A DNA stretch of 64,000 nucleotides, taken from the NCBI GenBank assembly GCA_047495785.1, contig JBLDXI010000059.1:124001-188000 (forward strand), in the 5' to 3' direction. The DNA is from Lepidodermella squamata. Its lineage: Eukaryota > Animalia > Gastrotricha. A program made the translations under genes and the position numbers. Shown here one piece after another: positions 33,138-59,100 of this stretch (positions are counted from its first letter, which is position 1; every line of letters starts with the position of its first letter). The notes beneath the pieces were generated by a model, which did not search any database, was not told the origin of the DNA, and saw nothing but the letters and a program-made list of their open reading frames with translations.

Positions 33138-36100
33138 TTACGGATCTAATAAAATAATATCTTCGAGTTGCTCTTTCGCGAATTCGACGACGTAGGCAGC
33201 TTGACGTGTGCTTTTTGACGAGTTCATTTGCCGGATGAAGTCGGTTGCGCTGTTCCACGCTGCCGTGCCACGATAGAGAACGGTTCGTTGACTAGTGGTG
33301 TTGCTGTGGTCAACAGGAAGACATCCTTGGGCTTTTTGACGTGTCTCCCTCGCGGCTTCTCTCTTTGTGAAATCAGCGATGAGTAGATCGGGTGCTTCAC
33401 CATGCAGAATCTGCCAGACCAGTTTTATGGTGTGAACTTTCCTTCTTCCCGCTAGCGAGATCCAGCGAAGGTCGCGGATGAGGGGCTCAACAGAAAAAGT
33501 GTCCGGCTTCATCATGAGTGCTCTGATTCCGGCGCGCTGTGCTTTGTCGAGCTTCTTCAAGGCTTTCTCGGAACCAGCTTCGAGGAGGATGTCGCAGTAG
33601 CCGACGCGAGATTCGATGAGTCCGTTGTAGATGGCCTTCCGAGCATCCAGAGAAACGCCATTTCGACCAGCTAGGCGGAGAGCGTAGGCGCCACTGCGGC
33701 ATTTTGCAGCAATATTTTCGACGTGGTGTTCGAAAGTGATGCGGTAGTCGATTTCAAGTCCGAGGAGGGTCATTGTAGGCTGTGGAGCGACGAGAATGCC
33801 GTTGACGTTCACTTCAGGCAGTTCGTCGTCAATTTTAAGCAGTTTCGGTGCCAAAAACATTATTTGAGTCTTCTTTTCGTTCAGCTTCAGGCTATTTGAC
33901 CGGAGCCAAGTTGCTACTGAGGTTAGTTGTAATTCGAGTTTCGCTTTAACTGAGGAGATTGAGTCACCAGAGGCATAGATAGTGGTATCATCAGCGTATA
34001 GGAATATTCCGCAGTCAGGGTCGGTTACCAGACTTGGTAATTCGTTTACGTAAATGGTGAACAGGAGAGGCCCCAGAACACTTCCTTGAGGGACGCCGTA
34101 TTTGATGGGTAAAGGTTCAGATGAAGCATTGCCAAGTCGGACGACTTGCTTCCTGTTATCAAGGTAGTCGCGAAACAACTCGATGGAATTACGATCGAAG
34201 CACAATGACTCAAGGGATGCGAGAACACCCTCGGGGTCTAAAGAATCGAATGCTTTCGAGAGGTCCAGGCTGGCGACCGCCACGTATTTGTCTTGAGATG
34301 CAGCGGTGATGCACCGGTCGAGCTGAGCTTCGATACAGCTGACGGTGTTATGGAATTTGCGGAAACCAAATTGCCTCTGCGAGAGAAGCTTGTGAGTGTT
34401 CAGGTGGTTTTTCACTTGGTCACTGACGCAGCGCTCGAAGAGTTTTAGAGCTGAGGGCAGGATGGAGATGGGGCGGAAATTCGACGGTTCGCCCTTGTCA
34501 CCGCTTTTGTGGATCGGTGTGACGAAGCTCGTTTTCCATACGTCGGGAATCTGTTTTTCCTCGATGATCTTGTTGAAGAGTTTGACGTAGGCTTTCCTGA
34601 TGTCGTCGTCTTCAAGAGCGTCGCGTAGCACACATTCAGGTATGCCATCGGCGCCAGTGGTCTTCTTAGTTGAGAGTTTCTTGGCGTTCACAATGATGTC
34701 TTGTTCTGTGATGGCGCGCAGCGAGAATAGATTGGCATCTTGCCGTGATCTGATGAAATTGGGCAGCGGAAGAGATCGTGCTACTAGTTCACCGACCGAA
34801 ACGAAGTATTGGTTCAGCTTTTTGCAGGTGTCGATGGCGGTTTCCGGATCGATGGCATCGTGTTGCTTTTTGGGCGGAAGAAAATCTCTCAGAACAGCCC
34901 AGATTTCTCGAGGATCACCTTTCGCGTCTTTGAATCGTTTCGCGTAGTATTCACGACTCCACTGTCTCGTCAGCCTGCGAACTTCTGATTTGGCTTTTTT
35001 ATAGCGAGCGATCGAGGTGGCAGTAGAGTTCTCAGCGTTTGCGCGCTCGGATGCTGCTTTTTCCCGTATTGCTTTGAGCAAGGTCGAGCCAGCTTCGCTG
35101 GATGGATCGAGGTTCAGTCGGTTTCCTTTCTTCCCGTTAGCTCCGGGTTTTATGGTTATCTCCTTCTTTGGAGCGACAATGTCAAGAGCCTCGGTTAGGC
35201 TTTCAACCAGATGGCGTTCCAGTTCATAAGCAGTGGCATCTTCGCGTATAACTTTTTTGAGCAGTTTCTGGCTTGCCATCGCTCTGAAGACAGTAGATTT
35301 GTAGCCCTTGAAAATTCGAACGGTTGTTTTGAATGATTTAGATAGCTCCACTATGGTGTTGACTACTGAGGCAGTTCCAAAGTGATCCGATAGACCAGGT
35401 ACGGTGGCTGACGCTAAGGTGACATCAGTTGAGTTGACCCAAATATGGTCTAGGCAGGTTCGGGATGCTGGTCTGGTGATCGTGTAATCTTCGGTGATGT
35501 GGAAGCCGAGTGAGGAAGTAATGCTACTGAGTGAGATGGAGAGCTTAGGATCAAGGGTGTTGATGTTGGAATCTCCGTGTATGACGATTTGATGGCCGGT
35601 TTTGTTTTCAAGATTGATTTTAACCAATAGAGAGGCGATTTCATCCTTCCAATTAGGATGATCAGGAGGCCTGTAGATTGAATATACTCTAACTATTCCT
35701 TTTTTCGTTTTAATGTCAGCGAAGATGTTTTCGATAGAATGTTCGATAAAGCCGAAGCGGACGACGCGGATCGATTTTTTCACGAGTATTCCGACACCGC
35801 CGCCCCCATCAGAAGTCCTGGATCGAACTTCGTAGTTGTAATCTGGGAACTTGCTTGACAGGTGACCCTTGGGAGTGTCAGGGTTGAGCTTAGTTTCAGA
35901 TAAGCAGATCACATCAGGAAGACATTCAGACATGATTTTTGCAAGTTCCGCAGATTTAGTCATTAGGTGATTGATGTTGAAGTGCATGACAGACATGGCG
36001 CCTAAGTGTCCTTTCACAACACTTGCCCATTCCTTGTAAGAGCACGTCGGCAGTATGGGCAGCCCTAATTGAGCCGGAGGATCGTTATCATCTGAGACGG

Positions 36101-36320
36101 ATCCGGTTGGGTTAGGGGCTGTACAACGAGGGCACATCCAGGGTGTAGATTCATCAGCTGTGGCTGCCTTGTATTCGTCATCAGTTAATTTACAGCATTT
36201 TCTGTGCCACCATTCATCGCAGCCACTGCATGCGATGCTGGGACCATCAACGTGTTCTCCGCAGCAGGGGCAGAGGCAGGAGAGGCAGCAATCGCATGTC
36301 CAATTTGGCAGCAATCGCAT
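33138..36320 (-). CDS. PHD finger - apurinic-like endonuclease - reverse transcriptase polyprotein
   Basis: PHD: CPCC..IACSGCDEWWHRKC..WMCPRC. APE: HFNIN, CLSET, IYRPP, GDSN, CLDHI, LSDH. RT: NFRPISIL, QFGFR, LDLSKAFD, GVPQGSVLGPLLF, LYADD, LLG. First ATG is at 36320. Confidence 0.95.
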   Translation of the reverse strand: MRLLPNWTCDCCLSCLCPCCGEHVDGPSIACSGCDEWWHRKCCKLTDDEYKAATADESTPWMCPRCTAPNPTGSVSDDNDPPAQLGLPILPTCSYKEWASVVKGHLGAMSVMHFNINHLMTKSAELAKIMSECLPDVICLSETKLNPDTPKGHLSSKFPDYNYEVRSRTSDGGGGVGILVKKSIRVVRFGFIEHSIENIFADIKTKKGIVRVYSIYRPPDHPNWKDEIASLLVKINLENKTGHQIVIHGDSNINTLDPKLSISLSSITSSLGFHITEDYTITRPASRTCLDHIWVNSTDVTLASATVPGLSDHFGTASVVNTIVELSKSFKTTVRIFKGYKSTVFRAMASQKLLKKVIREDATAYELERHLVESLTEALDIVAPKKEITIKPGANGKKGNRLNLDPSSEAGSTLLKAIREKAASERANAENSTATSIARYKKAKSEVRRLTRQWSREYYAKRFKDAKGDPREIWAVLRDFLPPKKQHDAIDPETAIDTCKKLNQYFVSVGELVARSLPLPNFIRSRQDANLFSLRAITEQDIIVNAKKLSTKKTTGADGIPECVLRDALEDDDIRKAYVKLFNKIIEEKQIPDVWKTSFVTPIHKSGDKGEPSNFRPISILPSALKLFERCVSDQVKNHLNTHKLLSQRQFGFRKFHNTVSCIEAQLDRCITAASQDKYVAVASLDLSKAFDSLDPEGVLASLESLCFDRNSIELFRDYLDNRKQVVRLGNASSEPLPIKYGVPQGSVLGPLLFTIYVNELPSLVTDPDCGIFLYADDTTIYASGDSISSVKAKLELQLTSVATWLRSNSLKLNEKKTQIMFLAPKLLKIDDELPEVNVNGILVAPQPTMTLLGLEIDYRITFEHHVENIAAKCRSGAYALRLAGRNGVSLDARKAIYNGLIESRVGYCDILLEAGSEKALKKLDKAQRAGIRALMMKPDTFSVEPLIRDLRWISLAGRRKVHTIKLVWQILHGEAPDLLIADFTKREAARETRQKAQGCLPVDHSNTTSQRTVLYRGTAAWNSATDFIRQMNSSKSTRQAAYVVEFAKEQLEDIILLDP

Positions 36321-37490
36321 GTCCAATTGAGACAAAGCAAAACCAAAAATTCTAATCACTAATCACATGCAGACAAATTAATTAGTAAATAATAAAAATT
36401 TTAAGAAAAAATATGTAAAACTCATTTTTGTTATCGATAATTAACAAAACTTTATTTTTTATGTTTTCCAAGGCTGAATGGCTAAGAAGAATAAATCTTA
36501 GCTTTTGCCGAGTGCCCTGTCCCTGTAGCCCTTCTGTCCTGCCACTGAGGAACGAGGATCGTCTGTCTTTTGGGGATTAGGGACTATTTCATATTTGATC
36601 GTCTTCATCTTCACCGGTTGTAGTTGATTCATTTTTAGAAGCGAAAGTTTGCTTGTACCGGTAATGAACCTTTTCGCGACTGGCTGGCCGCTGTGATCGG
36701 ATTTCTATCATATCTGAAAATGCTTTCACTTTTTCGTCGTCTGACGTCTGACTTCGTTCAAAAATACTTAGACGTGGTGAAAGGATAGGGCTTCAACTTT
36801 CCTGGCAATATTCGCGAGACAACCTCGGGAAATGGTAGGGTTAACCGTGAAAGCTGAAAGTATTTCTCAAGTTTTTTGGATAAGTGTTTCAGGTGCAAAA
36901 TATTTATTACCGTAATCCGTAATTGTTGCTCGTTACTCCGGAGTGGTTTCCTCGCAGATCTGTCCCACTGTTGAGGTACTTATCAGATGTTAATGTCGAA
37001 TGTTTATTTAGTTTAGTTGCCGCGATTTTTCTAATCGCTAAACCGGGATAGATTAAAATCTAATTGATAATGATGATTATGGGAAACCCCGCGGTATTCA
37101 ATTTTCCGTTTGCCCAGCTCTGATTTTTTATGCCAGTGCCAGTCGTGATTTGAGACGCACGCCAAGAAACGGTACTATTTTTTCAAGCTGCCAACTGAAG
37201 GGGAGTGTGTGCAATATTGCCAGTGTTCAACCATATCCTATATCGCTCTTCAATTGAAACTTGGATTCTATTTTGGTAGCTATTCTTGGCGTTCTTGTCA
37301 TGTTTCGGATCGCAAGATGCCTCTTTCCGCGCATCTCATCTTTGCTCACTCTGACTGATAACAGCTGCTAAGTTGTTTAGAACATAGACTTTTTTCCCCT
37401 ATTGTTTCTACTTGGCTTGCGTTCATTTCAGTGTTGATATATGTTAATTTTTATTTTCACTTGAATCTCTCTGGAGGTCGCCGTTTATTG

Positions 37491-42888: not shown

Positions 42889-43106
42889 GTTACTTCTAGT
42901 TTTACCAATATATTACTCGAATGCCGATGTTAATGACCCTCGGTTGATTGCCCTCGCCCAAATATTTTGACGACGGTGGTGCGAAGCACTGTGGTTGTAT
43001 TTAGCATTGCCATTATTAAAATCATCTAATTGAGAGTCGCAATTTGTCTCTGAAATTATCTGATAGATTATACGTGTTCAATTTTTTTAGGTATATTAAG
43101 TTGAAA

Positions 43107-45234
43107 ATGTCCGACCAAGCCGGAGCCCAGGCGCCAGCGGCCGAGGGCGGCGAACAACAGCAACAGGCTTTTTCGACCTGGGGCGTTGTCAAGACGCTGC
43201 TTTTCCGCATGGCTTTCATCTACTTCATCGCCAACATTTTCCAGTCATTCCGCGGCCCGCCCGCCGGCGTCCAAGGACCAGCAGGCCAGCCGCAAGTCCA
43301 GCTGCCTGTCGGCAATTTAGTACCACGCGGCGCCCCGCTCGACATGTATATCTACATCAGTGAACAGGAAGAACTGCTGAAACCGAAAACGGACGGACTG
43401 CTGTTTTGGCAAGAGAAGGGCATTGGTTACGGCGATTGGAACGCAGGACCTGCTAACGATGGATCACTTTACTACGAAGGCGTGTTACCCCTGACCGAAG
43501 CGGTGCAAAACAACGCGTCGTTGTATCTGCACTGTTATTTCGTCCCAGCCGGTGCTGATTCACCGGACTACCCGACTTCCGTTCATCGCATTCCGAAAAA
43601 CACTTTCCCAACTTTTAGCAAAACGTTCCGCCTTAATGCGTATAAGCGACGATATTTCCATAAAACCGCGAATTTGTTGACTGGCGAGACGAAGGCGCCT
43701 GCTGAACTGGTTCGCCAAGCCGACCACCCGGCGACCTACGAGGTCATCAGCCACTGGCACGAAAATCTGACCATCAACCTTGTCGACGATCATACTGCGT
43801 GGATGAAGGGCCAAATCCCACCTCCACTCGACCAACTCGTCGAATTTGAGCCAACCTCAAACCGTTATTATCCTATAATTTTCTTCAACAATTATTGGAA
43901 TTTGCACGAGGAGTACCAACCCATCAATGACACCGTTAAGGAGGTGAAACTTCGCCTAAGCATGGCTCCTCTTTCCATGTTCCGTCTTCAAATGTACGCC
44001 GGGCAAATGATGCGTAACAAATGGTTTGCTCTACTGGGGCAGGATGAAGTTGAAGAGTCGCCTGAAGAGCAAGATTCCTTGAAACGCGCTATCCTAGAGA
44101 CAAATGTCTATTTGCTGTCTATCACCGTAGTTGTTTCGATTCTTCACTCAGTTTTCGAGTTCCTAGCCTTCAAGAATGACATTCAATTCTGGCGGTCTCG
44201 CAAGACCCTTGAAGGCTTATCTGTTCGCTCTGTGTTTTTCAACAACTTTCAATGTCTCATCGTGCTGCTGTATATCCTGGACAACGATGCTAATATGATG
44301 ATTAGGATCTCTATCTTTGTGTCGCTGCTCATCGAAATGTGGAAAATTACCAAAGTCGTCGATATTACGATTGACTACGAACGCAAATTTCTGCGCATCT
44401 TCCCGCGCGTTGTCATGACCGACAAATCAACATACACCGAGTCTAATACTCGCGAGTACGACAGACTCGCGTTCAAATACCTTTCGTGGGCCCTGTTTCC
44501 GCTGCTGGTCGCCTACGGTATTTACAGCGTCCTCTACCACGAACACAAAGGATGGTACTCATTCGTCCTTTCAATGCTGTACGGATTTTTACTCACTTTT
44601 GGTACGTTTTGGATTTCATTTAATGGAGTTTTTCTGCTGCCAATGAGAGTTCGACCCGTTTTTCTTGCCGATTTGGCTTCGAGCGCGTTTCGTTCTTAGT
44701 TCGAGCGGCTTTTCTTTCTAACGGCCTCGTTAGTGGGTGCAGCTAAATTGATAAGCGTTATAGTCTCATTCAAGAACTGGTTTTCAGTACTTTATCAGAC
44801 TTTCGCTAATATTTTGTTTTTCATTTTTCAGGGTTCATTAGCATGACTCCTCAGTTGTTTATCAATTACAAGATGAAAGTAAGCTATCTTGTTCGATTTT
44901 GATATTTTAATTAAGTTGGATTTTATATCAGTCTGTAGCCCATCTTCCGTGGCGAATGCTCACTTACAAGTTTCTCAACACGTTCATCGATGACCTCTTT
45001 GCTTTCGTTATACGAATGCCAAATCTCTATCGACTCGGCTGTTTGCGCGATGACGTGATCTTCTTGATCTATGTCTACCAGCGCTGGAAGTACCCTGTCG
45101 ACCCGAAGCGTATCAACGAATTCGGCGTCACGGGCGAAGAGCTGGTGAATGGGCCAGAACAGCAGCCTGAAGATAGTGCCGACCAGCCAAAGGCGTTGAC
45201 TGACTCTAAGACTGACTCTAAGAAAAAGAACTAG
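43107..45234 (+). CDS. CLPTM1: Cleft lip and palate transmembrane protein 1 homologue (putative lipid scramblase), 3 exons
   Basis: SHWHENLTINLVDD, YYPIIFFNNYWNL, EEQDSLKRAILETNVYLL, FEFLAFKNDIQFW, FGFISMTPQLFINYKMKSVAHLPWRMLTYKFLNTFIDDLFAF, YPVDPKRINEFG. Confidence 0.95.
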
Positions 45235-45628: not shown

Positions 45629-48596
45629 ATGAGATGGCGAGTGGAGAAGAAGAAGAAGAGGATGGCGTCTATTTCTGTAGAAACAGACCTGAGCATATAT
45701 CTATATGATGAAACATCACCCATGCTTGATTTTCGCCCGAACTGGTGGTTCTATGAAATTAATATTATAATTAAAAATCCATTTGAACCATTTTAATCTT
45801 TTAATGATTTTTAGGCGGTTTTTACGAGTGAAATTGATGCATTATTGGCAGAAGTGGCGCTACCATCGACTTCAAAAGCGCGCATTTCTTGGTTGCTTCC
45901 TGCTGACTGCTGCCTCTCTCATAGCTTCATTCGCATTTATTCGAATTCCAAACGCATCAAATCGAGCTTCTAGCCAAACTGCGAATGCGACGATACCAGA
46001 TCGATGGGGCGATGGCTTGAATGAACACAAACGCTTATTCTTGTCATCATTCAGCGAAACGGTCGAGTTTTTCAGCAAGGAGTTCAACTTTTCAGAAGAG
46101 GAGACCGTCTTCAGATCTTATACGTAAGTTGTTCTTTACATTACATATTCCTTTTTATATTGGTTTGTTGGATAATAGGCCACCTGTCGATTTTGCTCAC
46201 TGGCCAAGATTGTCAAATGGTGCTATATCAACGTTGCCGTATCATAATGCCGTATTTGCTGCTGGAATTTTTAACGGTGCAAGAATCGCGCAGCTACCAG
46301 CTTTTCTAAACCAGCGGGTATTAGACGCGCTTGTTGATGGAACAACTTTGTCAGTTTCGATGTCATCGGAGTTTTCATTTAACGTGCTATCAGGGATTTT
46401 CATGACCAAAATATCTTCTCCGCTTTTTGAAATCAATCAAATGATTTACGCTCATCAAGAGATTCCGAATTTGCTAGTAATGGATTTGACTATAAAACGA
46501 CCTTCTAATCTAGCCCCGCGAGTTGCCCCGTCGTTAACTCTGCGTCTTCAGCAAACAGACGCTGACTCACCTGATTTCAATAATATACACGTACCCGTTG
46601 CCAAAGGTTTGTCGGCATATGGCGATAGTCGAATTTTCGATTCCGCCAAACACTGGTATGGACAAGCGAAACAACCTGAGTGGGACGACTCAGATTACTT
46701 CGATAAAGGCTTAAAGAGCAAACACATCAAACGCGAGGGGGCGTATATTTCGGTTCATTACGACGAAGTGCCGCGAGTTCTGGAATTGAAGCGAGGCCGA
46801 AGTAAGGAACGCTGGATTTTCATCGCATCATATGCCGAAAATGCTCGTGACTCATTGAAAGCGTATCAAATCGGAAGAGAGCAAGTGATCAGTGATCGAC
46901 TGTTAGATTCTCATGTCAGTGCTTGGCATCAAATATGGAAAAGTGGCCGATTGTCTGTGCGCGGCAATTCCTCCTTAACTGCTGCTGTTTTATCCTCTCA
47001 ATACGCCTTATTCTCGGAAATTCCGATGTCTGAAAAACGAGGCGCCAGGTTTCCCGGCCTCAGTTTATGCGGGCTTGCACCCATGAACATGTCGGAATGT
47101 GATTACGGGCTCGTATCAAATGTGCAAGAATACGCTGTTGTCCCTACTCTCGCTGCAATTCAGCCACTTTTGGCGAAAAAGCTCGTTTTTAATCGGGTGT
47201 CCCGGCTTTCGACGGCCATTTCCAACTCGGCAAGAATTCACTCGAAGTTAGGAGCGGCTTTTCCATGGCTAACTGCAACTTCTGGCCTTGAATTGCACGA
47301 GAACAAACATTTAGCAAGGTATAACAAGGCTTCATCCGGTCTGGTTGCTGCCGCTATTCAGCTTGTCTTGCAGTATATGCCGAAAACAGACTCGTTATTT
47401 CGCAACGCTGTTGTCGACTCGGCAATAGCAATCGCCGAATTCTACTCGAATCACATCCACCCGCGTCAATTATCTCGACCAGGTTCAACTGGGCCGGGAA
47501 GTGAGATGACTCGCTACAATATACCCCGAGTCATTGGTCCATATGATCAAAGTTTTGTGGTCAACAATTCCCTGCCCGTTAACCTGTTGGCTAAGCTGAG
47601 TTTCCAGCTAGCTAGTAGGCTTATGCCTAAACACTCGGACGTTTCTAATTGGCTAGACATGAGCAACAAAATTCACATTCCGGTTGCAAAGTAAACTACA
47701 GTTTTGAGAAAAATTCATTCGTAAACTTTTGTTTTACTTTATATTATAGGAGTTGGTGGGATGTTTGGAAAGTTCACGACGGGTTCGCTTATTCGACCGA
47801 TGTCCGGCTCTCTGATTTTGTGTTCTTGCGCTCTGAATTCGTCTCGGACGGTTTGGAGACGAAAATGCTCCGTAAAATGTTGGAGACGTACCTGCCGCTA
47901 TATGGAGAAAACTCGGCGTTTGGATTGAGCTTATTCGCCTCGAGTTATCTGGCTACAAACAATCACGAGGAGGCTTCAGCTATTTTGGAACAAATTTTAC
48001 GGCAATTCACCTCGACTTATTTCAATTCCATGGCTGGCATAGACTCTTCTGTTACATCAACCACTACCACAGAAGCAACTACGAGCCGCGATTTCGTACA
48101 GACAACAACTGAGAAAACTGTCTCTGATTTGAAGAAAAATTCTGCCTACTGGGTGTGGCTATGTGGGCCGACTTCTGTCGCGATGAGTGCTGCAAACTGC
48201 CTTGCAAGTGCATCTGCTCTACCTTATTTATTCTCATACGGCTGGCTGGGCTTCCAGCCTGCGTTCGACTCGGATTTGGATTACCTGAGTGATTTCGCGA
48301 CTGTTGCATCGTTTCAACCGGTTTCACCTCTGCCGGATGGAGTTGACAAAATCGAACTGCTTGACTGGCATCTGCCTGACATTGGAGATGCCGCAGCGCT
48401 TTCTATCTCCTGGAACGGCACTATCGTTGATTTTCGTTTGACGCGCCGATCTGCTGCTAGTCAAGATCGGCGTTGTCGTTTCGCGTGTCGAATCGGTCGC
48501 CGTGTGTTTAAATTCCCGCGAAAATCGGGCGTTCTCAGTATTAAGCCGGCTGCAAATCGACTGGTTCCTATCAAAATTACCTGTGTCAAACAGTAA
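45629..48596 (+). CDS. Type II membrane-anchored, catalytically degenerate glycoside hydrolase family 65 protein (PGGHG/ATHL1-like), 4 exons
   Basis: Hydrophobic anchor AFLGCFLLTAASLIASFAFI, then PGGHG-like motifs PRLSNGAI..VFAAGIFNG, QMIYAHQ, HVSAWHQIW, SSQYALFSEIP, GLSLCGL, GAAFPWLTATSGLE, AIAEFYSNHI, YNIPRVIGP..VNNS. Start codon uncertain (45629 or 45722). Confidence 0.75.
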
Positions 48597-51086: not shown

Positions 51087-53827
51087 TTAATCTTCCGATT
51101 GAGGTCTTATTCGCACATGAACGTAGGTTTCAGACAGCGATTTTTCAGTCAAAGCCCTCATGCAAATAATTCCTTGCTGGCCAATAGTTGGGGTAGCTCC
51201 GTATAACGCGACCAGGATGAATAGCTTTCGTCTATCAACCGGGAGAGAGTAGTCCACCGCGGAAACAAGACTCGAAATCGTTGTACCGATCGTGAGAGAT
51301 GGAAGAGCCAAAGGGGGCACTTTTGACGGTTTGAATCTTTCGCCATCGTTTTTTATTGAAAATCCCTGAATTCTTCCATTGCCATCGTCCGCAACCAGCA
51401 AATTTCCGATGGCATCAAAAAACAACCCTTTTGGACGTAGTACCTGGTTCGCCCCTTCACCAGCCGACGCTAGCTGGCCAATCAGCTCCGATCGCAGGTT
51501 CATTTCAATTGATATCGTGTAAATTTTCACGCGAAACAGCACAACTTGTGAGTGCTTGCGGTCGCTAACGGCTAGGATATGTACCTTTCTCTGGCCCAGC
51601 TCGGTATCACCCTCATCCTCATCCAAGTCAGGCAATCTATAGAACGCGCATTTGTATGGCGCCCATTTACTTTCGGCTCCAGGCGAAATTCGAAGCAGGC
51701 ACCGCCTACTGAGGGTTGAGAAAACGCGAACGGCCTGGTCTGCTTCATCACACGAGTACAGCAAGTTCTTGTCGACATCAACTGCAAGGCCGGCGAAGTT
51801 CGGAAATTGCCTCGATGGTTCGATAAAACACTCGGCGACCACGGATTTGTTAAACTGACCTTTATACTCGACTTCACTCAAACTGGCGAGAAAGATGCCG
51901 TCGTTCTGATGCGTAGTGAAATATAGCTTGTTTGTGTAGTGGTCCAGGGTTGCGTGCATTATTTTCGAGTTAACTCTGGCGGATGTTGCGACATGGCCCG
52001 ACCAAGCTTCAGTAGGCGCGTCATCATTCTTCTGCAATGCCTGAAAGTCGCTGGGTTGAAAAAAAAATTATTGCTCACATTATCCGACTTACGACTATGT
52101 CGCCGTTGTAGCAGACGGCGATGATGATACTTTGGATTGGGTGGGAGATAAGTTCGACGCAATGAGAGGGAGCTGCCCACCATAGTCCACGTTTGGTGCG
52201 GGGTATCGCTGCAATGTTTTGCCAATATCGTTTTTGGTAATACAAGCGATGCTATAAGAAAAACAAGACCATCGCATTGAGATTCGGAGACCAAACTCAG
52301 TTAATACCTTCTCTTCAAGTTCATCCCAAGTTTGCAGAGACTCGTGGGGGCCAGGCGCGGTGAGGGCTCCCCTTGCCACGTAGTTAGAAATCGGAATGAT
52401 GGTGAATGGGTCAGATATAATATTTTTAATCGTGGGTCGATTATACGGATTTTCGCGGGCACTCAAAATTTTCGACACAAGATCGACCATTTCTCGACTG
52501 TAATTCTCAAATAAAGTCAGGTTGGCTTCCACGCTAAATATAATGATTACTCATTCGAAGGAAAAGTGCTTAGTGACAACTCACGGATTTTCTCCATTGA
52601 CAAATAAAGGCTCCTGCAAGGTAGCCATGTGATAAAGAACAAGCCCAAGTTGCCAAATGTCTGATTGTTGATCGTAGAAACCTGGGCGAAGCATTTCTGG
52701 AGCCATGTACATGACATTTCCTACTATTGTTTTGCCGATAACTGGCTGGACGAAGGGCAGCGTGTTCTCTTCATCAAGAATGCTCGACGTACTTTGACTT
52801 CGCTGTTCAGATGGTCGTTGCTCAGATGCGCGGGGTTTCAAAGTGCTACAAGACGGTATTTCAAATAGTTTTAACTTCTCTAGTAGTGCTTACTCTTCAA
52901 TTGTTTTTGCAATATCAAAACTCCCCAGTTTTATCAACTTCGCATCATTATCCAAGAAAATATTCTAGAATAAGGTTTAGAAAGCTAAACACTTTTGAAG
53001 TCGAGAAAAAGATAGAACATACATCGACCGTGATTCCCCTGTGGATTATCTGTTGCTCATGTATAAAATTGACGACTAGAGCTAATTGACAGAACCAAGA
53101 TTGAATTTGTTGTTCTTCAAGCTGTTGGCCTTTTCGATTTTCCAAGAACTTGGCCAAAGTTCCTGACAATAGTAAAATTAGTTTGACTAAATCATGATTT
53201 TCCCATCCTTACCCCCGTCACAATATTCCAAGACCAGGTACAAAACATCATCCTCTGTTGTAAAAAGTCAAGGATCAATGTTGTAATGTTGAACATTCTG
53301 GAAATTTTTACTGAAGAAATGCTGGTACAGTTGAATGATATTTGCATGCGTGAAGCCATTCAGTTTTCGAAGAAGCTCAGGCTGCAGAAGTCAAAATTTA
53401 ACCATCTTCGCTGCACCGTACAACAACAATTACCTCCTTTGATGCCAGCTCTTTGTTTCGCTGATCGTCAGTCAAAAATTCCTTGAGAAGCACGCTCTTC
53501 AGCATCACCATCTTGCCGTCCACCTTTTGGCGGGCCAGCACTATTTTACCGAATCGGCCGGACTGCAGCGGAAGCGTGTGCTTCAGTATTTCGTAGCGAT
53601 CAAGCATTTTTCTGCGGTGGTACTTAGAATCTAGCTCAGAGTTTCGGGGAGTATAAAACTGTGTGGTTACTGCGTGGGATCTCCTCGCTATCTTATCTGT
53701 TATATAGTCAGTCAAATGCCGGCGCTGGAAATAGATACGAGAAAAACAGACTCTGCCAGATTACCACTCCAAGCATACGTGCATGATCTACTGGGAGCTC
53801 ATCTGAATTGTAGCATGGGAATGCCAT
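51087..53827 (-). CDS. NEK-like pseudokinase fused to an NHL-repeat beta-propeller, ~9 exons
   Basis: Manual splicing gives one frame: RYEIL..SGRFG..VMLK..KE|PELL..HANII..LYLVLEYCDGGTL..IIHRGITVD|N..KLGSFD..GNVMYMAPE..SDIWQLG..RPT, then ..LEEK|HRLY..GDIV|ALQK into NHL-like repeats (GLAVD..LYSCD..VRVF; RPKGLFFDAIGNLLVADDGNGRIQGF). Start at 53827 is inferred; 53607 is the alternative. Confidence 0.8.
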
Positions 53828-53911
53828 GCGAGATTGCGGGATGAAATAAGATCAGAGCTAAACTTGATTGATCATTAAGTAAACTGAAATGAATTTTTAT
53901 TACGAAAGATT

Positions 53912-55899
53912 TCACGAAACGAAGTCTTCTCCCGTTAGCAATGCTTCGCCTTGAGTCTGGCCAGAGGCTGTCATAATCATTTTATGTAGTAAAGTTTTGG
54001 CTTCAGCCTTACGGCGCCGGTTTTCTGTTTCCTGTTTGATTCGTTCAAGCAATTGTTGACCTTCAGCAATTCGTCGTCTTGATAACGAACAAGTTTTGCG
54101 AAGATGAAGATTGGGAACAGTTAGAACTTTTACAACACCATTTTCTTCGACCTGAAGTCCCAGCTGTTTGACACTAGGCGACAGATCCTCTCGAATCCTT
54201 AGAAAAATGACGTCATGATTTGCGAAATCGGAGCTGCCAAACGGGAAGCTTTGACGAAACTAATTTTAATAAGTAACATAGAGAAGAGATTTGTAAAGCA
54301 ACTCAAGAAATTACATACCTTGAGGCTGTCGGGCACAACTACATTTTTGAGTCGTTTAACGACTTGAATCCGGTCAATGGAATCTATTACAGTTTCGGTC
54401 TGCTCTTCATTCAGTAGCCGAAACCCTGTGACATCCCGAAGTTCGGTGTGCTGCATATTTTGAACAGATTGCTTCGACAGAAATGCGGCTTGAATTGCTG
54501 CTCCTTCGACGACGGCATTGTCATCCAGAGACGAGATGTGAATGACAGCCGTTCCGTTGAAATACTTTTTAACTAAATCTTGAACTTTCGGAATGCGACA
54601 GCACCCACCAAACATGTAAACGTGGCCTATGCTGTAGCGTTCAACCCTAGCTTTTCGTTTAGCTTCGGCTAACACTGTGTCGAAAAGTTTGGGTATGTCT
54701 TTGTCTAGCCGTTGCATCAAGGCTTCGAGCTCTTCGCGAGAAAATTGTATTTTGATAGGTTTTTCACCGCCTGCTTGAACAGTGAATGTAACATTAGTGG
54801 CGGCGGATAGAACGATTTTCTTCTTCTCGCAATCTCGCCGGATATTTACGAGAACTGAGGAATGACCGCTAGCTTCTCGACCATCTTCGTCTTTAATCAG
54901 CTTGTCCACGCAAGCATTGTACAGGCTTTCCGTCAGATCGGCGCCGCCATATTCTTGCGAACCTACACTTGCTACAACGTTGATTAATCCTTGCTTCAAT
55001 TCCATTACAGATGCCTCTAGCGAATCCGCGCTGAATCGGAAAGCTATAGCGTAGCCTCCGAAAGAATAAATCTCCTCGGGATGATAGGAGTTGCACAAAT
55101 AGTAGAGTCCACCTAAAATCAACTTGGTGTGCAATCGCGCGTTAATGAATCCAGCAATTTTAGCGGCGTCCAGGTAAGCTTGACGCTGGTGATCGTTGAA
55201 ACTCGACGGAATAGCCAGCACTGCACTTTCAACTCGTTTCCCATCGAGTTCTTTCTCAGCCCTGTCTTTAACGTAGGCTAGTAACAGGGCGAACTGCATA
55301 ACTGGCGACAACTCTACAGCCTCGTCGTTAGCGTCAAATATTGGCCATTTCACGGTTTTCTCTGATCGGTGGATATTTCTAACAAGATCTGTTGCCACTT
55401 TGCAATTTAGCTGCTTTAAAAAAGCTTGGGCTATTGTACCATAGACGATAGGTGGTGAGTGGGGAGGGTCCTCTCCCGGAGCAGCTATGTACGTTGGCGT
55501 CATATTTTGGCCATGTTCATTCTGCAATATTCTCACTGAAATGGAAGCAGAAAATAATTTAAGAAGGGCGGCAATCCTATCAATTTTACCTCGGCCATTT
55601 TGGATAAGTGCAAATCGAGTATTGACAGTTCCAATATCGATGCCTATAGTTGGAAATTCCCAAGCAACAATTTTCGGCTGATTCTCAGGCGTTTGGCTCG
55701 GTGCCGGGACCGATTGAGGAGAAGTCGCCGCTGTAGCACCATAACTTATCGAGTTGCTCTTGCCCTTCTTGCGGATCGGTTCGGACTGCAGCCGATTGAT
55801 CTGCTTGTTAACACGAACAACGCAGCAATACCACGAGAGGAGGAGGAAAAGCGTCACGCCTCCGAGAATGCTGAAAAATATTGCTATCACTTCAGACAT
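53912..55899 (-). CDS. N-terminally membrane-anchored, highly divergent Hsp70-family protein, 3 exons
   Basis: TM VIAIFFSILGGVTLFLLLSWYCCVV, then GIDIGT, NEHGQNMTPTYIA, PSSFNDHQRQAYLDAAKIAG, GGAD, CEKKKIVLS, FGGCCRIPKVQ, AVVEGAAIQAA. The last exon encodes a shortened SBD remnant (LQVEENGVVKV..LSRRRI..AEAK). Confidence 0.85.
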
Positions 55900-56162
55900 C
55901 TCTCAAAATCTAATGGTCGGCGTCTATTGTTGCATGTCGGCATAGTCTGCAAGCCCATGTGACTTAATCAGATAGCGATGATTAAACAGCCTTTATCTTA
56001 TCTCAAGCCGCCCTGTATCAACGAAACTGTCCTTCTTTCCCAACAAAGCACCAAATAAAAACACGACTGATTATATAGGTAGCTGATTTTATTCCGATCT
56101 AATGATATAACCTATATTATCTTTTAAAGAAAATTGCCACGTTCAAAAATATACGCGAATAG

Positions 56163-59100
56163 TTAATCAGCGTTCGTTTGAGACAATTGTTGCAATCTTG
56201 AAAGAGCTGCAAACAGCTGCAACATATTCGGCAAAGGCTCGTTGAAATGCTTGGACAGCGACGAAAAATAATATTCTGGAGCCTGAAAATCAACCTCAGT
56301 CTACTGAAATCTCCTCGTTTTTATTTTCCTACCTTTTTCTCCAACTGCAGCATAGTTGATAGCTTCTCGCCATCGAATTCCTCCATTTTAGCGCCAAATT
56401 TCCTTCAAAACAGGTGAAAATTAACATGAAGCTAAAAGTTCGCAAGACATACTGATAAAGCTTTTCCTGCTGCAACCATTTTTTCACGTCATTTTTCGAC
56501 CATTTCGAAACTGAGGGATTGAGCGGAATGTTATTTGAATCTCTACGACCAGTAGTACCATTGGCCGGCGCTGCTGCAGAGACGGAAGTCGGGGCTACTA
56601 TGTTGTTTTCCACGGGCGCATGGTTACCATTGACCTGCTTTACCGCGCTATTCTGCGAGCCACCGATAGCTTCAATTTCGGCTAGCAAATGCTCGAACGC
56701 TTCCTCGAATTGCGATTTTGTTAAAGACATGTCGATGTACTTTCTGGCTCGCACTAGAATACCTAGCCAGCCATCAGGAGCATAACTGAAATACGCAAAG
56801 CAATGAGGACGAAATCATTGACTCGACAATAACGTACTGATACTCCATGTTTATAGGAATCATAGGTTTCGATAGAACGTGCGTGTATTGAGCTGAAAGA
56901 TTCATATGCAAATTCGAAGGTATATCGGTGAATAAATTAGCTGACCTTCAGCGCGGCAAGGATTACTCAGCTTGTAGCTATCTGAGAAGCAAACTAGCAC
57001 TAGCCACGCGTTTTCCACTGCCTGGGCCATTTTCTCTAGCAAGTCGCCGTGCATCTTGTCAACGTCCATCCAAACTTTGAAGCCTTTTGCGACAAGCTGA
57101 GCTTTCATTCGCAAAACAGTCTCCTGCTGTTTCCAAGAATAGCTGATGAAAATGTGCCGGTCATTTGCGTCTCCAGTTCGGCGTTTCGTCGGCGAAGCGC
57201 CGCCCTCCACAATTTTCTCCCATTTTTCGATGAAATTCAGCGTGCGACTAGCAATTTTTTTGACATTTTCATCTTCGGAGAGAGTTAAATTTTTCAAGGG
57301 ATTCATCAATTTCTCCTTCTCGGCCCTGATTTTGCTGCGGATCGAAGATTCGTAAGACAGAGCCCACAACAACTCAAGTCCTTTGATCTGATCATCAGGC
57401 CTGTCGCTGTCCAGCATGTCCGAAATGAGGTCAACGACGTAGTTGTCCATAAGCGTTTTCTTGTTGTGATCATTCGAGGCAAGAGCTCGCAGTCCGTCCA
57501 TCAATTCGTCCAGGGTAAATAGGCCTACCCCAGGGCTAAAGGCTTTGCGGCCAGGGTGGTTCATTGCCATTTTAGTCAGTTGCACGATAGATTTTACCAC
57601 TCCTTTTTCGTCGACCAACTTGGACGATTCCTCTGAATCAGCTAAGATATGCGCCAGGCACAAACTTCCTAGTATCAACGAGTTGGGCACACTTAGATGC
57701 TTTGTGATAATCTATAGAAAAATTTTAAATTCGAAACCCCATGGCAAGCATTTTTTATCACCTTAACGGCGTCGTTGCCCAACAGTTCGTTTTTGTTTTC
57801 GGGCGAACGGGCCAGATTGTACAGGATAAAAATACACTTTTGAGCCAGGTCAGCGTTGACGTGACCTTTCTGTCCCTTTTCGGGTCCATTTTTGAGATTT
57901 TTCAGCAAAAATGGTATGAAACCGGCTTTAGCAAAAGCCTATTAAGTAAGGTGGGACATAAGAAATCTGGAATATAAAATTCGAAATTTCTTACCAATCT
58001 AGCATCAACGAGCTCCGTTATGTTCGAAATGTGAAGAAGTAGATTTTGAATCATTTGGAAAGCGACATCATTCGACTCGAGATTTTGTTTCAACAAAAAC
58101 TTCGAAAAAACGAAAGCAATATCTGCGAAAAGAACAAAACAGCTTAACCTTATTTTCGAGCATCTGAAACTATTTTTACCTGGATAATTTTCTTGAATCA
58201 AAACCTGAACGACTTTTTCGCGCCATTTAGGATCCCAAGCTGAGAACGAATCGTTGAGCAACTCTATTGCCCGTGCAGATTCGTTGCAAACCAAGCTCGT
58301 CGGGGATAGGTCGTTCAGTTTTGTGAGAAAATTAACACGTAATCGCGTTTCATTCAACGCCCGCTCTAATAAATGAATCATATCATTGTCCTGAAAAGTT
58401 GCCTCGCCGTCCTGCTTATTGTTGTCCTGCTGTAGAAGCAACGTGTCATTCGATTCACTCTCTTTCAGCCTCTTCACCTCGCCGTCAGTTTCGCTATTCG
58501 GCGATTCCGAATCGGCCTTGACAGTGGAATTGCCTTGCGGTTCTTCTGATATCGAAGATCTAACTGCAGCCGAACTCGCATTACCTTCGCGTTGTTGTTT
58601 GATATTCGAAAGGATTTTCTTCGCCTTCAAAACGGGCATAGTTTCGAGCGACGAACTGTTCATTGCCGAAACTTTGCCCCACATCACCTGAATATCTTGT
58701 TGAGAGAGAGCTGTTTGGCTGAGCTTTGTTCGCTCCGAGAAAAGAGCCAGAAACAGCTCAACGCCTCTCAGCTGCGTGTTTTCATTGCTAGAATTCAGCA
58801 GCTCGCAAATCGAGTTGATAACCCCATTTTGCAGCAGTTTCTTCATATTTGCCTCATTCTGGCTGATATAGACTAGCCCATCGACTAGACCATCTACCGG
58901 CATGCGAAACTCGTGCTTGCTACCGGGTTTCAGCTCATTGGTTATGGCGCGGATGAAAACGAGGTTAACATTTCGGTCGTCCACAAATTTCGCAGCCGGG
59001 GGTGATCGTCCGTTCAGAAGTTTCAGAAAGCACAGCGAAGCCATGCATTTAATATCTTCATCAGTTGCGTCCATCATATTGGCAAATGTCTAAAATAAGG

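What the first reader, a model, noticed from the sequence alone, without database searches (positions are those of the whole stretch)
53912..55899. Single-pass membrane Hsp70 with a dismantled ATPase site and vestigial substrate-binding domain
A ~22-aa TM helix at the extreme N-terminus is followed by CC (possible palmitoylation) and a basic run (RKKGK), predicting a cytosol-facing Hsp70 fold. Against canonical Hsc70: DAKRLIG becomes DLVRNIH (K71 lost), INEPTAAA becomes HTKLILGG (E175 lost), FDLGGGTFD becomes FRFSADSLE (phosphate-2 loop lost), and linker DLLLLDV becomes HTELRDV. The beta-SBD is mostly deleted and there is no EEVD or KDEL. The ORF and splice sites are intact, so it looks like a maintained pseudo-ATPase (decoy, nucleotide sensor or scaffold) rather than a pseudogene.
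Basis: partly seen in the sequence, partly recalled or inferred. Interest (0 to 1): 0.7.

Follow-up and report, generated by a model that had tools for sequence, protein, structure and literature searches.

The report
Membrane-tethered Hsp70 relative lacking ATPase residues
An invertebrate gene encodes an expressed, evolutionarily maintained relative of the Hsp70 chaperone. It is probably anchored in a membrane by one N-terminal helix and has lost the residues needed to burn ATP, a combination I could not find described; its function is unknown.

Summary
The gene is real. It lies on the minus strand, 55899-53912, has three exons and encodes 624 aa. RNA-derived contigs skip two GT..AG introns, 55536-55589 and 54260-54318. 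The first intron is in frame and is hidden inside the 566-aa ORF.

The product is an Hsp70-family protein (Pfam HSP70 8e-45; nucleotide-binding domain modelled at pLDDT above 90). It starts with a 25-residue hydrophobic helix, then a basic flank and a disordered linker.

One claim is overstated. The substrate-binding beta-domain is shrunken and degenerate in sequence, not mostly deleted, and one long lid helix remains.

In 1.84 billion representative proteins there is one real relative, a metagenome-borne orthologue (39-43% identity). It shares the N-terminal helix, the intron position, the same V/K/R replacements and a C-terminal GEDF motif. Polymorphisms are mostly synonymous (13 of 17).

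So this is a maintained, very probably non-hydrolysing Hsp70 paralogue with a membrane anchor. It is not a pseudogene, and it fails three defining features of HSPA13; grouping on a tree could not be tested. Topology, nucleotide binding and partners are untested. This is a new variant of a known kind, of moderate interest.

The parts
53912..55899 (-). Whole coding span of the gene: three exons, 624 codons plus stop
   Evidence: ORF list and sequence. The spliced translation has one terminal stop. RNA contigs cover 53894-54777 and 54839-55825.
55590..55899 (-). Exon 1: residues 1-103 plus the first base of codon 104
   Evidence: The RNA contig joint 55535/55590 has CT..AC ends on the + strand, which is GT..AG on the gene strand. 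A TGA stop lies two codons upstream of the ATG.
55816..55890 (-). N-terminal hydrophobic helix, residues 4-28, the putative signal anchor. It contains C25-C26 and the WYxCV motif shared with the orthologue.
   Evidence: It is the only segment with Kyte-Doolittle above 1.4. AF2 models a helix at 2-38. The orthologue has an equivalent 25-residue segment, and tblastx matches 55804-55893 to the orthologue loci. Not covered by RNA contigs beyond 55825.
55660..55785 (-). Basic juxtamembrane run (RKKGK at 55759-55773) and a Ser/Pro/Thr-rich linker, residues about 39-80
   Evidence: pLDDT is below 50 for residues 39-76. The orthologue's linker is longer and unalignable.
55627..55644 (-). Phosphate-1 loop GIDIGT. 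D10 and T13 are kept; T14 is V.
   Evidence: Column mapping against canonical Hsp70s.
55536..55589 (-). Intron 1: 54 nt, phase 1, in frame and free of stops, so invisible in an ORF scan
   Evidence: The RNA contig skips it. The orthologue has a 56-nt intron at the same codon position. The read-through residues have pLDDT below 50.
54319..55535 (-). Exon 2: rest of the nucleotide-binding domain, the linker and the first part of the reduced beta-subdomain
   Evidence: Pfam HSP70 8.1e-45. PDB sequence hits to Hsp70 nucleotide-binding domains down to 3.7e-30. Foldseek TM 0.82-0.85 by target to Hsp70 nucleotide-binding domains.
55381..55383 (-). V155, at the position of catalytic K71
   Evidence: The orthologue also has V.
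55123..55125 (-). K241, at the position of E175 (NEPTAAA has become HTKLILG)
   Evidence: The orthologue also has K.
55015..55041 (-). Degenerate phosphate-2 loop FRFSADSLE: D199 to R270, GGG to SAD, T204 to S, D206 to E
   Evidence: The orthologue has FRFGGGFLE, with R at D199 and F at T204.
54430..54450 (-). Interdomain linker HTELRDV in place of the hydrophobic DLLLLDV
   Evidence: The orthologue has KTELNEV.
54260..54318 (-). Intron 2: 59 nt, phase 0
   Evidence: RNA contig joint 54259/54319 with GT..AG ends. This intron is absent from the orthologue.
53912..54259 (-). Exon 3: rest of the reduced beta-subdomain, one long helix (about 53953-54088), the C-terminal motif LLTGEDFVS (53915-53941) and the stop
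   Evidence: Translation and alignment to the orthologue. The orthologue's model has a helix at 474-517 with pLDDT above 90.
53896..53901 (-). AATAAA, the likely polyadenylation signal
   Evidence: Read from the sequence. The RNA contig ends at 53894.

Best explanation
This is a lineage-restricted paralogue of eukaryotic Hsp70 that has been turned into a membrane-tethered protein that does not cycle ATP.

Shown:
- A spliced, expressed three-exon gene.
- An Hsp70 nucleotide-binding fold.
- Identical replacement of the three residues that run hydrolysis (K71 to V, E175 to K, D199 to R) in two species that share only 39% identity.
- A polar interdomain linker.
- A shrunken substrate-binding beta-domain of degenerate sequence, plus one lid helix.
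- A conserved N-terminal 25-residue hydrophobic helix and a conserved C-terminal GEDF[VI][SA] end.
- Purifying selection.

Inferred:
- The helix is an uncleaved signal anchor, inserted N-out/C-in, most likely in the ER or another endomembrane. The whole Hsp70-shaped body would then sit on the cytosolic face, on a flexible tether of 50-80 residues.
- The protein cannot hydrolyse ATP and cannot run the ATP-driven clamp cycle. The adenosine pocket is largely kept (E268, K271, S275, G338, G339 and D366 positions), so it may still bind nucleotide. Alternatively the two new basic residues may fill the Mg-phosphate site.
- It therefore most likely works as a static adaptor fixed in one (docked, ATP-like) shape. 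It would hold a specific partner through the remnant beta-domain or the C-terminal motif, or recruit or regulate canonical Hsp70 or J-proteins at that membrane. The soluble non-hydrolysing relatives Ssz1 and Hsp110 work this way.
For: Gene model and expression: contigs of run X1 skip 55536-55589 and 54260-54318 with GT..AG ends, whereas the DNA contig of X2 runs straight through. The spliced frame is open for 624 codons.

Family: Pfam HSP70 8e-45. PDB Hsp70 nucleotide-binding domains down to 4e-30. In the AF2 model the nucleotide-binding domain has pLDDT above 90, and Foldseek gives TM 0.82-0.85 by target.

Lost catalysis:
- Column mapping gives V/K/R at K71/E175/D199 in both species.
- Only 62 of 131 columns that are at least 95% conserved in canonical Hsp70s are kept.
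- K71A in Hsc70 and K70A in DnaK bind ATP but cannot hydrolyse it (as cited in PMC9691929).

Maintenance:
- There is one orthologue (P0121, E 2e-102) with the same N-terminal helix, the same phase-1 intron position, and the same end-to-end architecture and C-terminus.
- Variable codons are 9 synonymous to 3 non-synonymous among three orthologue haplotypes (p 1.3e-4), and 4 to 1 between the window and its RNA.

Shape: the orthologue's model (pLDDT 86, pTM 0.87) best matches full-length Hsp70s in the ATP-bound docked state, namely Ssb 5tky (TM 0.77), DnaK 4b9q, BiP and Sse1.

Topology: there is a single hydrophobic stretch of 25 uncharged residues. MSE or MAVD precedes it and R/K residues follow it in both species.
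Against: - No topology predictor or experiment was available. The hydrophobic segment could be cleaved, or could target another organelle.
- The RNA contigs stop at 55825, so the first 74 nt of the coding sequence, which encode the helix, are not directly shown to be transcribed.
- X1 is only guessed to be RNA by the tool; the intron-skipping contigs are my reason to accept it.
- AF2 often returns the docked state for Hsp70s, so the 'locked' shape is weak evidence.
- Loss of hydrolysis is inferred from sequence alone. Nucleotide binding is unknown, and R342 is G in the orthologue.
- No partner, localisation or phenotype is known.
- The family has only two known members, so the conservation argument rests on one comparison.
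Confidence: 0.62

Rival explanations
1. It is a luminal or secreted ER Hsp70 of the HSPA13/STCH kind. On this view the N-terminal hydrophobic segment is a cleaved signal peptide and the body sits in the ER lumen.
For: The hydrophobic segment lies at the extreme N-terminus. HSPA13 is an ER Hsp70 with a reduced C-terminus (PMC9691929, PMC12692333). The ER-type sequences in the tree are no further away than the cytosolic ones.
Against: - The uncharged stretch is 25 residues long, whereas signal-peptide cores are typically 7-15.
- There is no positive N-region.
- The flank after the segment is strongly basic, and no small-residue cleavage motif follows it.
- HSPA13 keeps the catalytic Lys and Thr, is an active ATPase, has no substrate-binding domain and is about 50 kDa. 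This protein has V at the Lys position, keeps a beta-domain and a helix, and is 624 aa.
- There is no KDEL- or HDEL-type ending.
Confidence: 0.1
2. It is still an ATPase that uses a rewired active site. For example, K241 and R270 might take over the roles of K71 and the metal, so it would be an unusual but working chaperone motor.
For: - D10, T13, the glycine-rich adenosine motif (GG at 338-339), D366 and the E268/K271/S275 positions are kept.
- The orthologue keeps the GGG of phosphate-2.
- The replacements are conserved rather than random.
- The J-domain contact arginine (R171 position) is kept.
Against: - Three residues central to hydrolysis are all changed.
- T204 is S in one species and F in the other.
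- The hydrophobic linker needed for allosteric and J-protein stimulation is polar.
- The invariant residues of the substrate-binding domain are mostly gone.
- Single K71 substitutions abolish hydrolysis in Hsc70 and DnaK (as cited in PMC9691929).
Confidence: 0.1
3. It is a decaying or functionless lineage-specific duplicate that happens still to be open and transcribed.
For: The branch is very long (stem 1.3-1.4 substitutions per site). Half of the invariant columns are lost. Only two family members are known.
Against: - The 624-codon frame is intact and both introns are correctly spliced.
- An orthologue at 39% identity keeps full length, the N-terminal helix, the C-terminal motif and the same active-site replacements.
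- Synonymous changes dominate the polymorphism (13 of 17; pooled p 4e-6).
Confidence: 0.05
4. It is one component of a conserved innate-immunity gene module with the neighbouring ARM-TIR-SAM genes and the kinase-NHL gene. This was another first-stage note on this window.
For: The neighbours on the same strand include a TIR-domain ORF at 56902-57690 (TIR_2, 5.8e-15). They also include weak kinase exons (best Pkinase match 5.8e-05, below Pfam's cutoff) and a weak NHL match (3.6e-04) at 51087-53715.
Against: The three orthologue contigs (up to 12 kb of context) share nothing with the window except the Hsp70-like gene. Their neighbours are an ANF-receptor gene, nuclear-receptor genes and an EGF-domain gene. 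RNA contig depth over this gene is well above that over the flanks, so there is no sign of co-transcription, though depth is a poor measure.
Confidence: 0.07

Closest known systems
Canonical eukaryotic Hsp70 (HSPA8/HSPA1 cytosolic type, BiP)
   Same: The order of parts is colinear: nucleotide-binding domain, linker, beta-domain, helix. These are the best sequence matches in the PDB (Hsp70-x, HSPA6, Hsc70, Ssb, BiP; 99-108 bits). The full-length fold matches at TM 0.72-0.77.
   Different: K71, E175 and D199 are replaced, phosphate-2 is degenerate and the linker is polar. The beta-domain is about 20 residues shorter and keeps about 5 of 21 invariant columns. The lid is cut to one helix. There is no EEVD or KDEL. 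An N-terminal hydrophobic anchor and a disordered tether have been added.
Ssz1 / HSPA14 (non-canonical Hsp70 of the ribosome-associated complex)
   Same: This is the nearest functional analogy. Ssz1 is an Hsp70-fold protein that binds but does not hydrolyse ATP. Its linker is atypical, it lacks the normal lid, and it cannot run the canonical cycle. It acts as a stable partner of another chaperone component (PMC7083937).
   Different: Ssz1 is soluble and is tethered to the ribosome through Zuo1; it has no membrane helix. It lacks the lid altogether, whereas this protein keeps one long helix. Kinship was not tested, because no Ssz1 or HSPA14 sequence could be fetched by name.
HSPA13 / STCH
   Same: It has a hydrophobic N-terminus, associates with membranes or microsomes, and has a reduced C-terminal half (PMC9691929, PMC12692333).
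   Different: HSPA13 is luminal and is an active ATPase with the catalytic Lys (K100) and Thr (T230). It has no substrate-binding domain and is about 50 kDa. This protein has V at the Lys position, a remnant substrate-binding domain plus helix, 624 aa, and a basic flank that predicts a cytosolic body.
Hsp110 / Sse1 / Grp170
   Same: These are Hsp70-fold proteins that work in a permanently docked, ATP-like shape without needing hydrolysis. Sse1 is among the best structural matches (TM 0.73-0.74). Some local motifs (PSSF.D, LDAAKIAG) resemble the Hsp110-like genes fetched by chance.
   Different: There is no long acidic insertion and no extended C-terminal helical domain. Overall similarity to the Hsp110-like L015 is lower (56.6 bits) than to the Hsp70/DnaK-type loci fetched in the same scan (87-100 bits) and to Hsp70 in the PDB and in the protein library (99-113 bits). 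The tree does not join them.

Membership tests
Hsp70 superfamily (Pfam PF00012) | Profile match above the curated cutoff, and an actin-like two-lobed nucleotide-binding fold | tested here: met
   153.6 bits against a cutoff of 20.6. AF2 nucleotide-binding domain at pLDDT above 90, with Foldseek TM 0.82-0.85 by target to solved Hsp70 nucleotide-binding domains.
Canonical (cycling) Hsp70 chaperone | Catalytic residues K71, E175, D199 and T204, and the DLGGGTFD phosphate-2 loop | tested here: not met
   V, K, R and S in the window; V, K, R and F in the orthologue. The loop reads FRFSADSLE.
Canonical (cycling) Hsp70 chaperone | Hydrophobic interdomain linker (D/E-LLLLD-V) | tested here: not met
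   HTELRDV in the window and KTELNEV in the orthologue.
Canonical (cycling) Hsp70 chaperone | Complete substrate-binding beta-domain with conserved pocket residues, plus a full helical lid and an EEVD or KDEL ending | tested here: not met
   About 5 of 21 substrate-binding-domain columns that are at least 95% conserved are kept. The beta-region is about 95 residues and there is one helix. The protein ends in GEDFVS.
HSPA13 / STCH | Active ATPase with conserved catalytic Lys and Thr (K100, T230 in HSPA13) | tested here: not met
   V155 and S275 stand at those columns. HSPA13 facts are from PMC9691929.
HSPA13 / STCH | No substrate-binding domain; about 50 kDa | tested here: not met
   The protein is 624 aa with a remnant beta-domain and helix. 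HSPA13 facts are from PMC12692333.
HSPA13 / STCH | Groups with HSPA13 sequences in a tree | not tested
   No HSPA13 reference sequence could be fetched by name with these tools. The trees built contain none that is known.
HSPA13 / STCH | Cleaved signal peptide and luminal location | tested here: inconclusive
   Rule-based reading favours an uncleaved N-out/C-in anchor. No predictor or experiment was available.
Ssz1 / HSPA14 type | Binds but does not hydrolyse ATP; lidless; obligate partner of a J-protein | not testable with these tools
   The sequence predicts no hydrolysis. Binding and partners need experiments. Ssz1 properties are from PMC7083937.
Hsp110 / Grp170 | Higher similarity to Hsp110 than to Hsp70; long insertion in the substrate-binding domain and an extended C-terminus | tested here: not met
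   56.6 bits to the Hsp110-like L015, against 87-113 bits to Hsp70/DnaK. The tree does not join them. There is no long insertion. That L015 is Hsp110-like is my own reading of its motifs.
HSPA12 | Atypical nucleotide-binding domain with family-specific inserts; groups with HSPA12 | not tested
   No reference sequence was available. The colinear PF00012 match over profile positions 101-414 argues against it, but is not a test.

The most novel reading that the evidence does not exclude
This would be a previously undescribed class of membrane-anchored Hsp70 pseudo-enzyme. In it, a conserved Lys/Arg pair (at E175 and D199) replaces the Mg-coordinating acids. The nucleotide site is then either self-filled or binds nucleotide without metal and without turnover, which freezes the protein in the docked, ATP-like shape. 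Displayed on the cytosolic face of an organelle, it would serve as a fixed landing pad or exchange factor for soluble Hsp70 or J-proteins, or as a dedicated receptor for one client. The conserved C-terminal GEDF[VI][SA] would be its docking motif.
Probability: 0.25. Interest if true: 0.65.

Novelty: new variant of a known kind. Interest (0 to 1): 0.45.

Why it matters
Hsp70s are usually brought to membranes by partner proteins such as membrane J-proteins. I know of no Hsp70-fold protein with an uncleaved anchor helix of its own; four full-text searches aimed at this found none. Non-hydrolysing Hsp70 relatives such as Ssz1 and Hsp110 have been informative because they show what the fold can do without the ATP cycle.

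A natural, conserved variant that combines a membrane anchor with an identically rewired active site in two distant species would be a ready-made test case. It could show how the nucleotide site sets Hsp70 shape, and how chaperone machinery is positioned on organelles.

Its very narrow distribution (two organisms in 1.84 billion representative proteins) limits its general reach.

Tried and rejected
- Word-index protein search: it returned only canonical Hsp70/DnaK at 25-33% identity and nothing closer.
- Hits P0122-P0136 of the exhaustive search looked closer than canonical Hsp70s. The nine scanned with Pfam are tandem double Hsp70s whose scores add up, so they are not kin.
- ESM Atlas search by features and by fold gave generic Hsp70 clusters only.
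- Looking for HSPA13- or HSPA14-like references among short hits through cluster names found none so named.
- Two scans of JGI metagenome contigs with family-specific peptide patterns: no member was found. The 13 loci returned are ordinary Hsp70-like or Hsp110-like genes at 25-29% identity, and two of them appear to use a ciliate genetic code.
- tblastn of the protein against the window found no paralogue in these 64 kb.
- tblastx of the window against the orthologue contigs found no shared neighbours.
- Trees: the pair is a 100%-supported clade on a very long stem, and its position is unresolved. Its neighbours changed between runs, so this is long-branch behaviour and I draw no origin from it.
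- dS between the two species is saturated (NG86 undefined), so only polymorphism was used to test selection.
- Four of the six literature searches looked for membrane-anchored or transmembrane Hsp70s, pseudo-ATPase Hsp70s, or the Hsp70 family in rotifers. None found a description of such a protein.
- Earlier scan notes searched by sequence or by words gave nothing.
- An Hsp110 origin was considered because of the PSSF.D and LDAAKIAG motifs. I rejected it on overall scores and on the tree.
- Acceptor sites at 54199/54198 and 54190/54189 were considered by eye and rejected, because the RNA contigs use 54260.
Full report
**Gene model.** The window is animal DNA, gene-dense, with short introns. 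Other ORFs match Golgin A5, NFRKB, CLPTM1, a TFIIIC subunit and a LINE reverse transcriptase. On the minus strand a 566-aa ORF (54199-55899) starts at an ATG with a TGA stop two codons upstream.

I laid two public runs on 53600-56200.
- The contig of run X2 follows the DNA without a break.
- The contigs of run X1 skip 55536-55589 (54 nt) and 54260-54318 (59 nt). Both gaps have GT..AG ends on the gene strand.
- X1 is only guessed to be RNA by the tool, but intron-skipping contigs are what RNA gives, so I take the gene as transcribed and spliced.

The first intron is in frame and has no stop, which is why it hides inside the long ORF. The second shows that exon 3 begins at 54259. The three exons (55899-55590, 55535-54319, 54259-53912) give an open frame of 624 codons.

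The X1 contigs cover 53894-54777 and 54839-55825. The first 74 nt of the coding sequence are therefore not directly covered.

**What the protein is.**
- Pfam gives HSP70 at 8e-45.
- The best solved relatives by sequence are cytosolic and ER Hsp70 nucleotide-binding domains, at 99-108 bits.
- An AF2 model of the 527-aa read-through ORF has a nucleotide-binding domain at pLDDT above 90, an N-terminal helix at residues 2-38, and a disordered stretch at 39-76. The retained-intron residues score below 50, as expected if they are not part of the protein.
- Foldseek matches solved Hsp70 nucleotide-binding domains at TM 0.82-0.85 by target.

I aligned the product with 82 canonical Hsp70/DnaK sequences and read the columns by motif. 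In Hsc70 numbering:
- Kept: D10 and T13.
- Changed: T14 to V, K71 to V155, E175 to K241, D199 to R270, G201-203 to SAD, T204 to S, D206 to E.
- Adenosine side largely kept: the E268, K271 and S275 positions, G338, G339, R342 and D366.
- The J-domain contact arginine in the RIINEP motif is also kept.

Of 131 columns that are at least 95% conserved, the window protein keeps 62. The linker reads HTELRDV and the protein ends in GEDFVS.

Mutating K71 alone stops hydrolysis in Hsc70 and DnaK while ATP still binds (as cited in PMC9691929). The loss of hydrolysis here is a strong inference from sequence, not a measurement.

**The substrate-binding half.** This is overstated.
- About 95 residues lie between the linker and the helix, against about 115 in canonical proteins. 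They align end to end with the orthologue.
- The joined window protein has no reference, so I folded the orthologue P0121 instead. Its model (pLDDT 86, pTM 0.87) has seven beta-strands at 371-468, at mixed confidence, followed by one long helix at 474-517 with pLDDT above 90.
- Foldseek places the whole model closest to full-length Hsp70s in the ATP-bound, docked state: Ssb 5tky (TM 0.77), DnaK 4b9q and 4jn4, BiP, and Sse1. AF2 tends to give this state, so I treat the 'locked' shape as a hint only.
- In sequence the domain is degenerate, with about 5 of 21 invariant columns kept.

'Vestigial' is a fair word; 'deleted' is not.

**Relatives.** The word-index search gave nothing closer than canonical proteins. 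Because the case rests partly on whether relatives exist, I ran the exhaustive search of 1.84 billion representatives. It found one real relative, P0121 (E 2e-102, 43% identity). The next hits scored high only because they are tandem double Hsp70s.

P0121 lies on metagenome contigs from three samples.
- The ORF just upstream of it encodes a 25-residue hydrophobic N-terminus, a WYxCV motif, basic residues, a linker and GIDIGT.
- It is joined to P0121 by a 56-nt phase-1 intron at exactly the codon position of the window's first intron.
- Spliced, the orthologue has 646 aa and aligns with the window protein from end to end at 39% identity.
- It has the same V, K and R at the three catalytic positions and a shared C-terminus, LLxGEDF[VI][SA].
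- Among the 149 best hits, only the orthologue and one other protein lack all three catalytic residues. The V/K/R combination is unique to this pair.

Two scans of JGI metagenome contigs with family-specific patterns found no further member. There is no paralogue within the window. The rest of the genome could not be searched.

**Selection.**
- Three orthologue haplotypes differ at 12 codons, 9 of them synonymous, against 22% synonymous sites (p 1.3e-4).
- The window differs from its RNA contigs at 5 sites, 4 of them synonymous.
- Between the two species, synonymous sites are saturated.

Together with the intact frame, correct splicing and conserved architecture, this rules out a pseudogene for practical purposes.

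**Topology.** There is one hydrophobic stretch, residues 4-28 (Kyte-Doolittle mean up to 2.5), with no charge inside it. Only MSE precedes it (MAVD in the orthologue), and R29, K32, R36 and RKKGK follow (KVGK..R in the orthologue).

By the usual rules this reads as an uncleaved signal anchor with the short N-terminus outside and the body in the cytosol. Signal-peptide cores are 7-15 residues long, and the more positive flank stays cytosolic. One cysteine at the cytosolic end of the helix is conserved (C26 in the window, C27 in the orthologue), so acylation is possible but untested. I had no topology predictor, so this remains inference.

**Placement among Hsp70s.** In two maximum-likelihood trees of nucleotide-binding domains, the pair forms a 100%-supported clade on a stem of 1.3-1.4 substitutions per site. 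It lies outside the DnaK and ER groups and apart from an Hsp110-like sequence. Its exact position is unresolved and unstable.

By path length the nearest sequences are cytosolic EEVD-type proteins. HSPA13 keeps the catalytic Lys and Thr, is an active ATPase, lacks a substrate-binding domain and is about 50 kDa (PMC9691929, PMC12692333). This protein fails all of those.

The nearest functional analogy is Ssz1, which binds but does not hydrolyse ATP, has an atypical linker and no lid, and works as a fixed partner of a J-protein (PMC7083937). Ssz1, however, is soluble.

**Context and organism.** The orthologue contigs share no neighbour with the window. The idea of a conserved module with the adjacent TIR and kinase-NHL genes therefore gets no support.

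The window's CLPTM1 is most like mollusc, nemertean, annelid and brachiopod proteins, at 50-57% identity, and no rotifer appears among the best 120 hits. The organism looks like a spiralian with no close annotated relative.

**Verdict.** This is a real, expressed, conserved Hsp70 paralogue with its own probable membrane anchor and a consistently rewired, very probably dead, ATPase site. It most likely acts as a static adaptor on the cytosolic face of a membrane. Which membrane, whether it binds nucleotide, and what it holds are all unknown.

Noticed in passing
window 55536-55589: The first intron is 54 nt long, in frame and free of stops, so ORF-based gene calls read straight through it and add 18 false residues. 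The orthologue's intron (L001 4747-4802, 56 nt) is not in frame, which made metagenome gene callers split that gene into two ORFs.
   Followed up: yes
window 53915-53941; P0121 residues 520-528: The extreme C-terminus, LLxGEDF[VI][SA], is conserved between two proteins that are 39% identical overall. It stands where cytosolic Hsp70s carry EEVD, and no partner is known.
   Followed up: partly
P0124, P0125, P0126, P0128, P0130, P0136: These proteins of about 825-1220 aa contain two Hsp70 units in tandem. Many have non-canonical catalytic motifs in at least one unit. Their origin and function were not looked into.
   Followed up: no
window 43044-44699: CLPTM1 is encoded as a single 551-aa ORF. 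Its best matches are molluscs and other spiralians at 50-57% identity, with no rotifer among the best 120 hits.
   Followed up: partly
window 33138-36359: An intact-looking LINE ORF of 1073 aa on the minus strand has an endonuclease/exonuclease/phosphatase domain, a reverse transcriptase and an N-terminal PHD-finger match.
   Followed up: no
window 56329-57690 and 51087-53715: The neighbours on the same strand are an ARM-TIR ORF followed by a weak SAM match, and a weakly matching kinase gene in several exons followed by a weak NHL match. They are not linked to the Hsp70-like gene in the orthologue contigs.
   Followed up: partly
L015 23-1156 and L016: These two JGI metagenome contigs, fetched by chance, carry Hsp110-like genes with in-frame TAA/TAG codons. 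The L015 stretch translates without stops under the ciliate code.
   Followed up: partly
window 46021-47694: An ORF of 557 aa matches the GH65 central catalytic domain (PGGHG/ATHL1-like).
   Followed up: no
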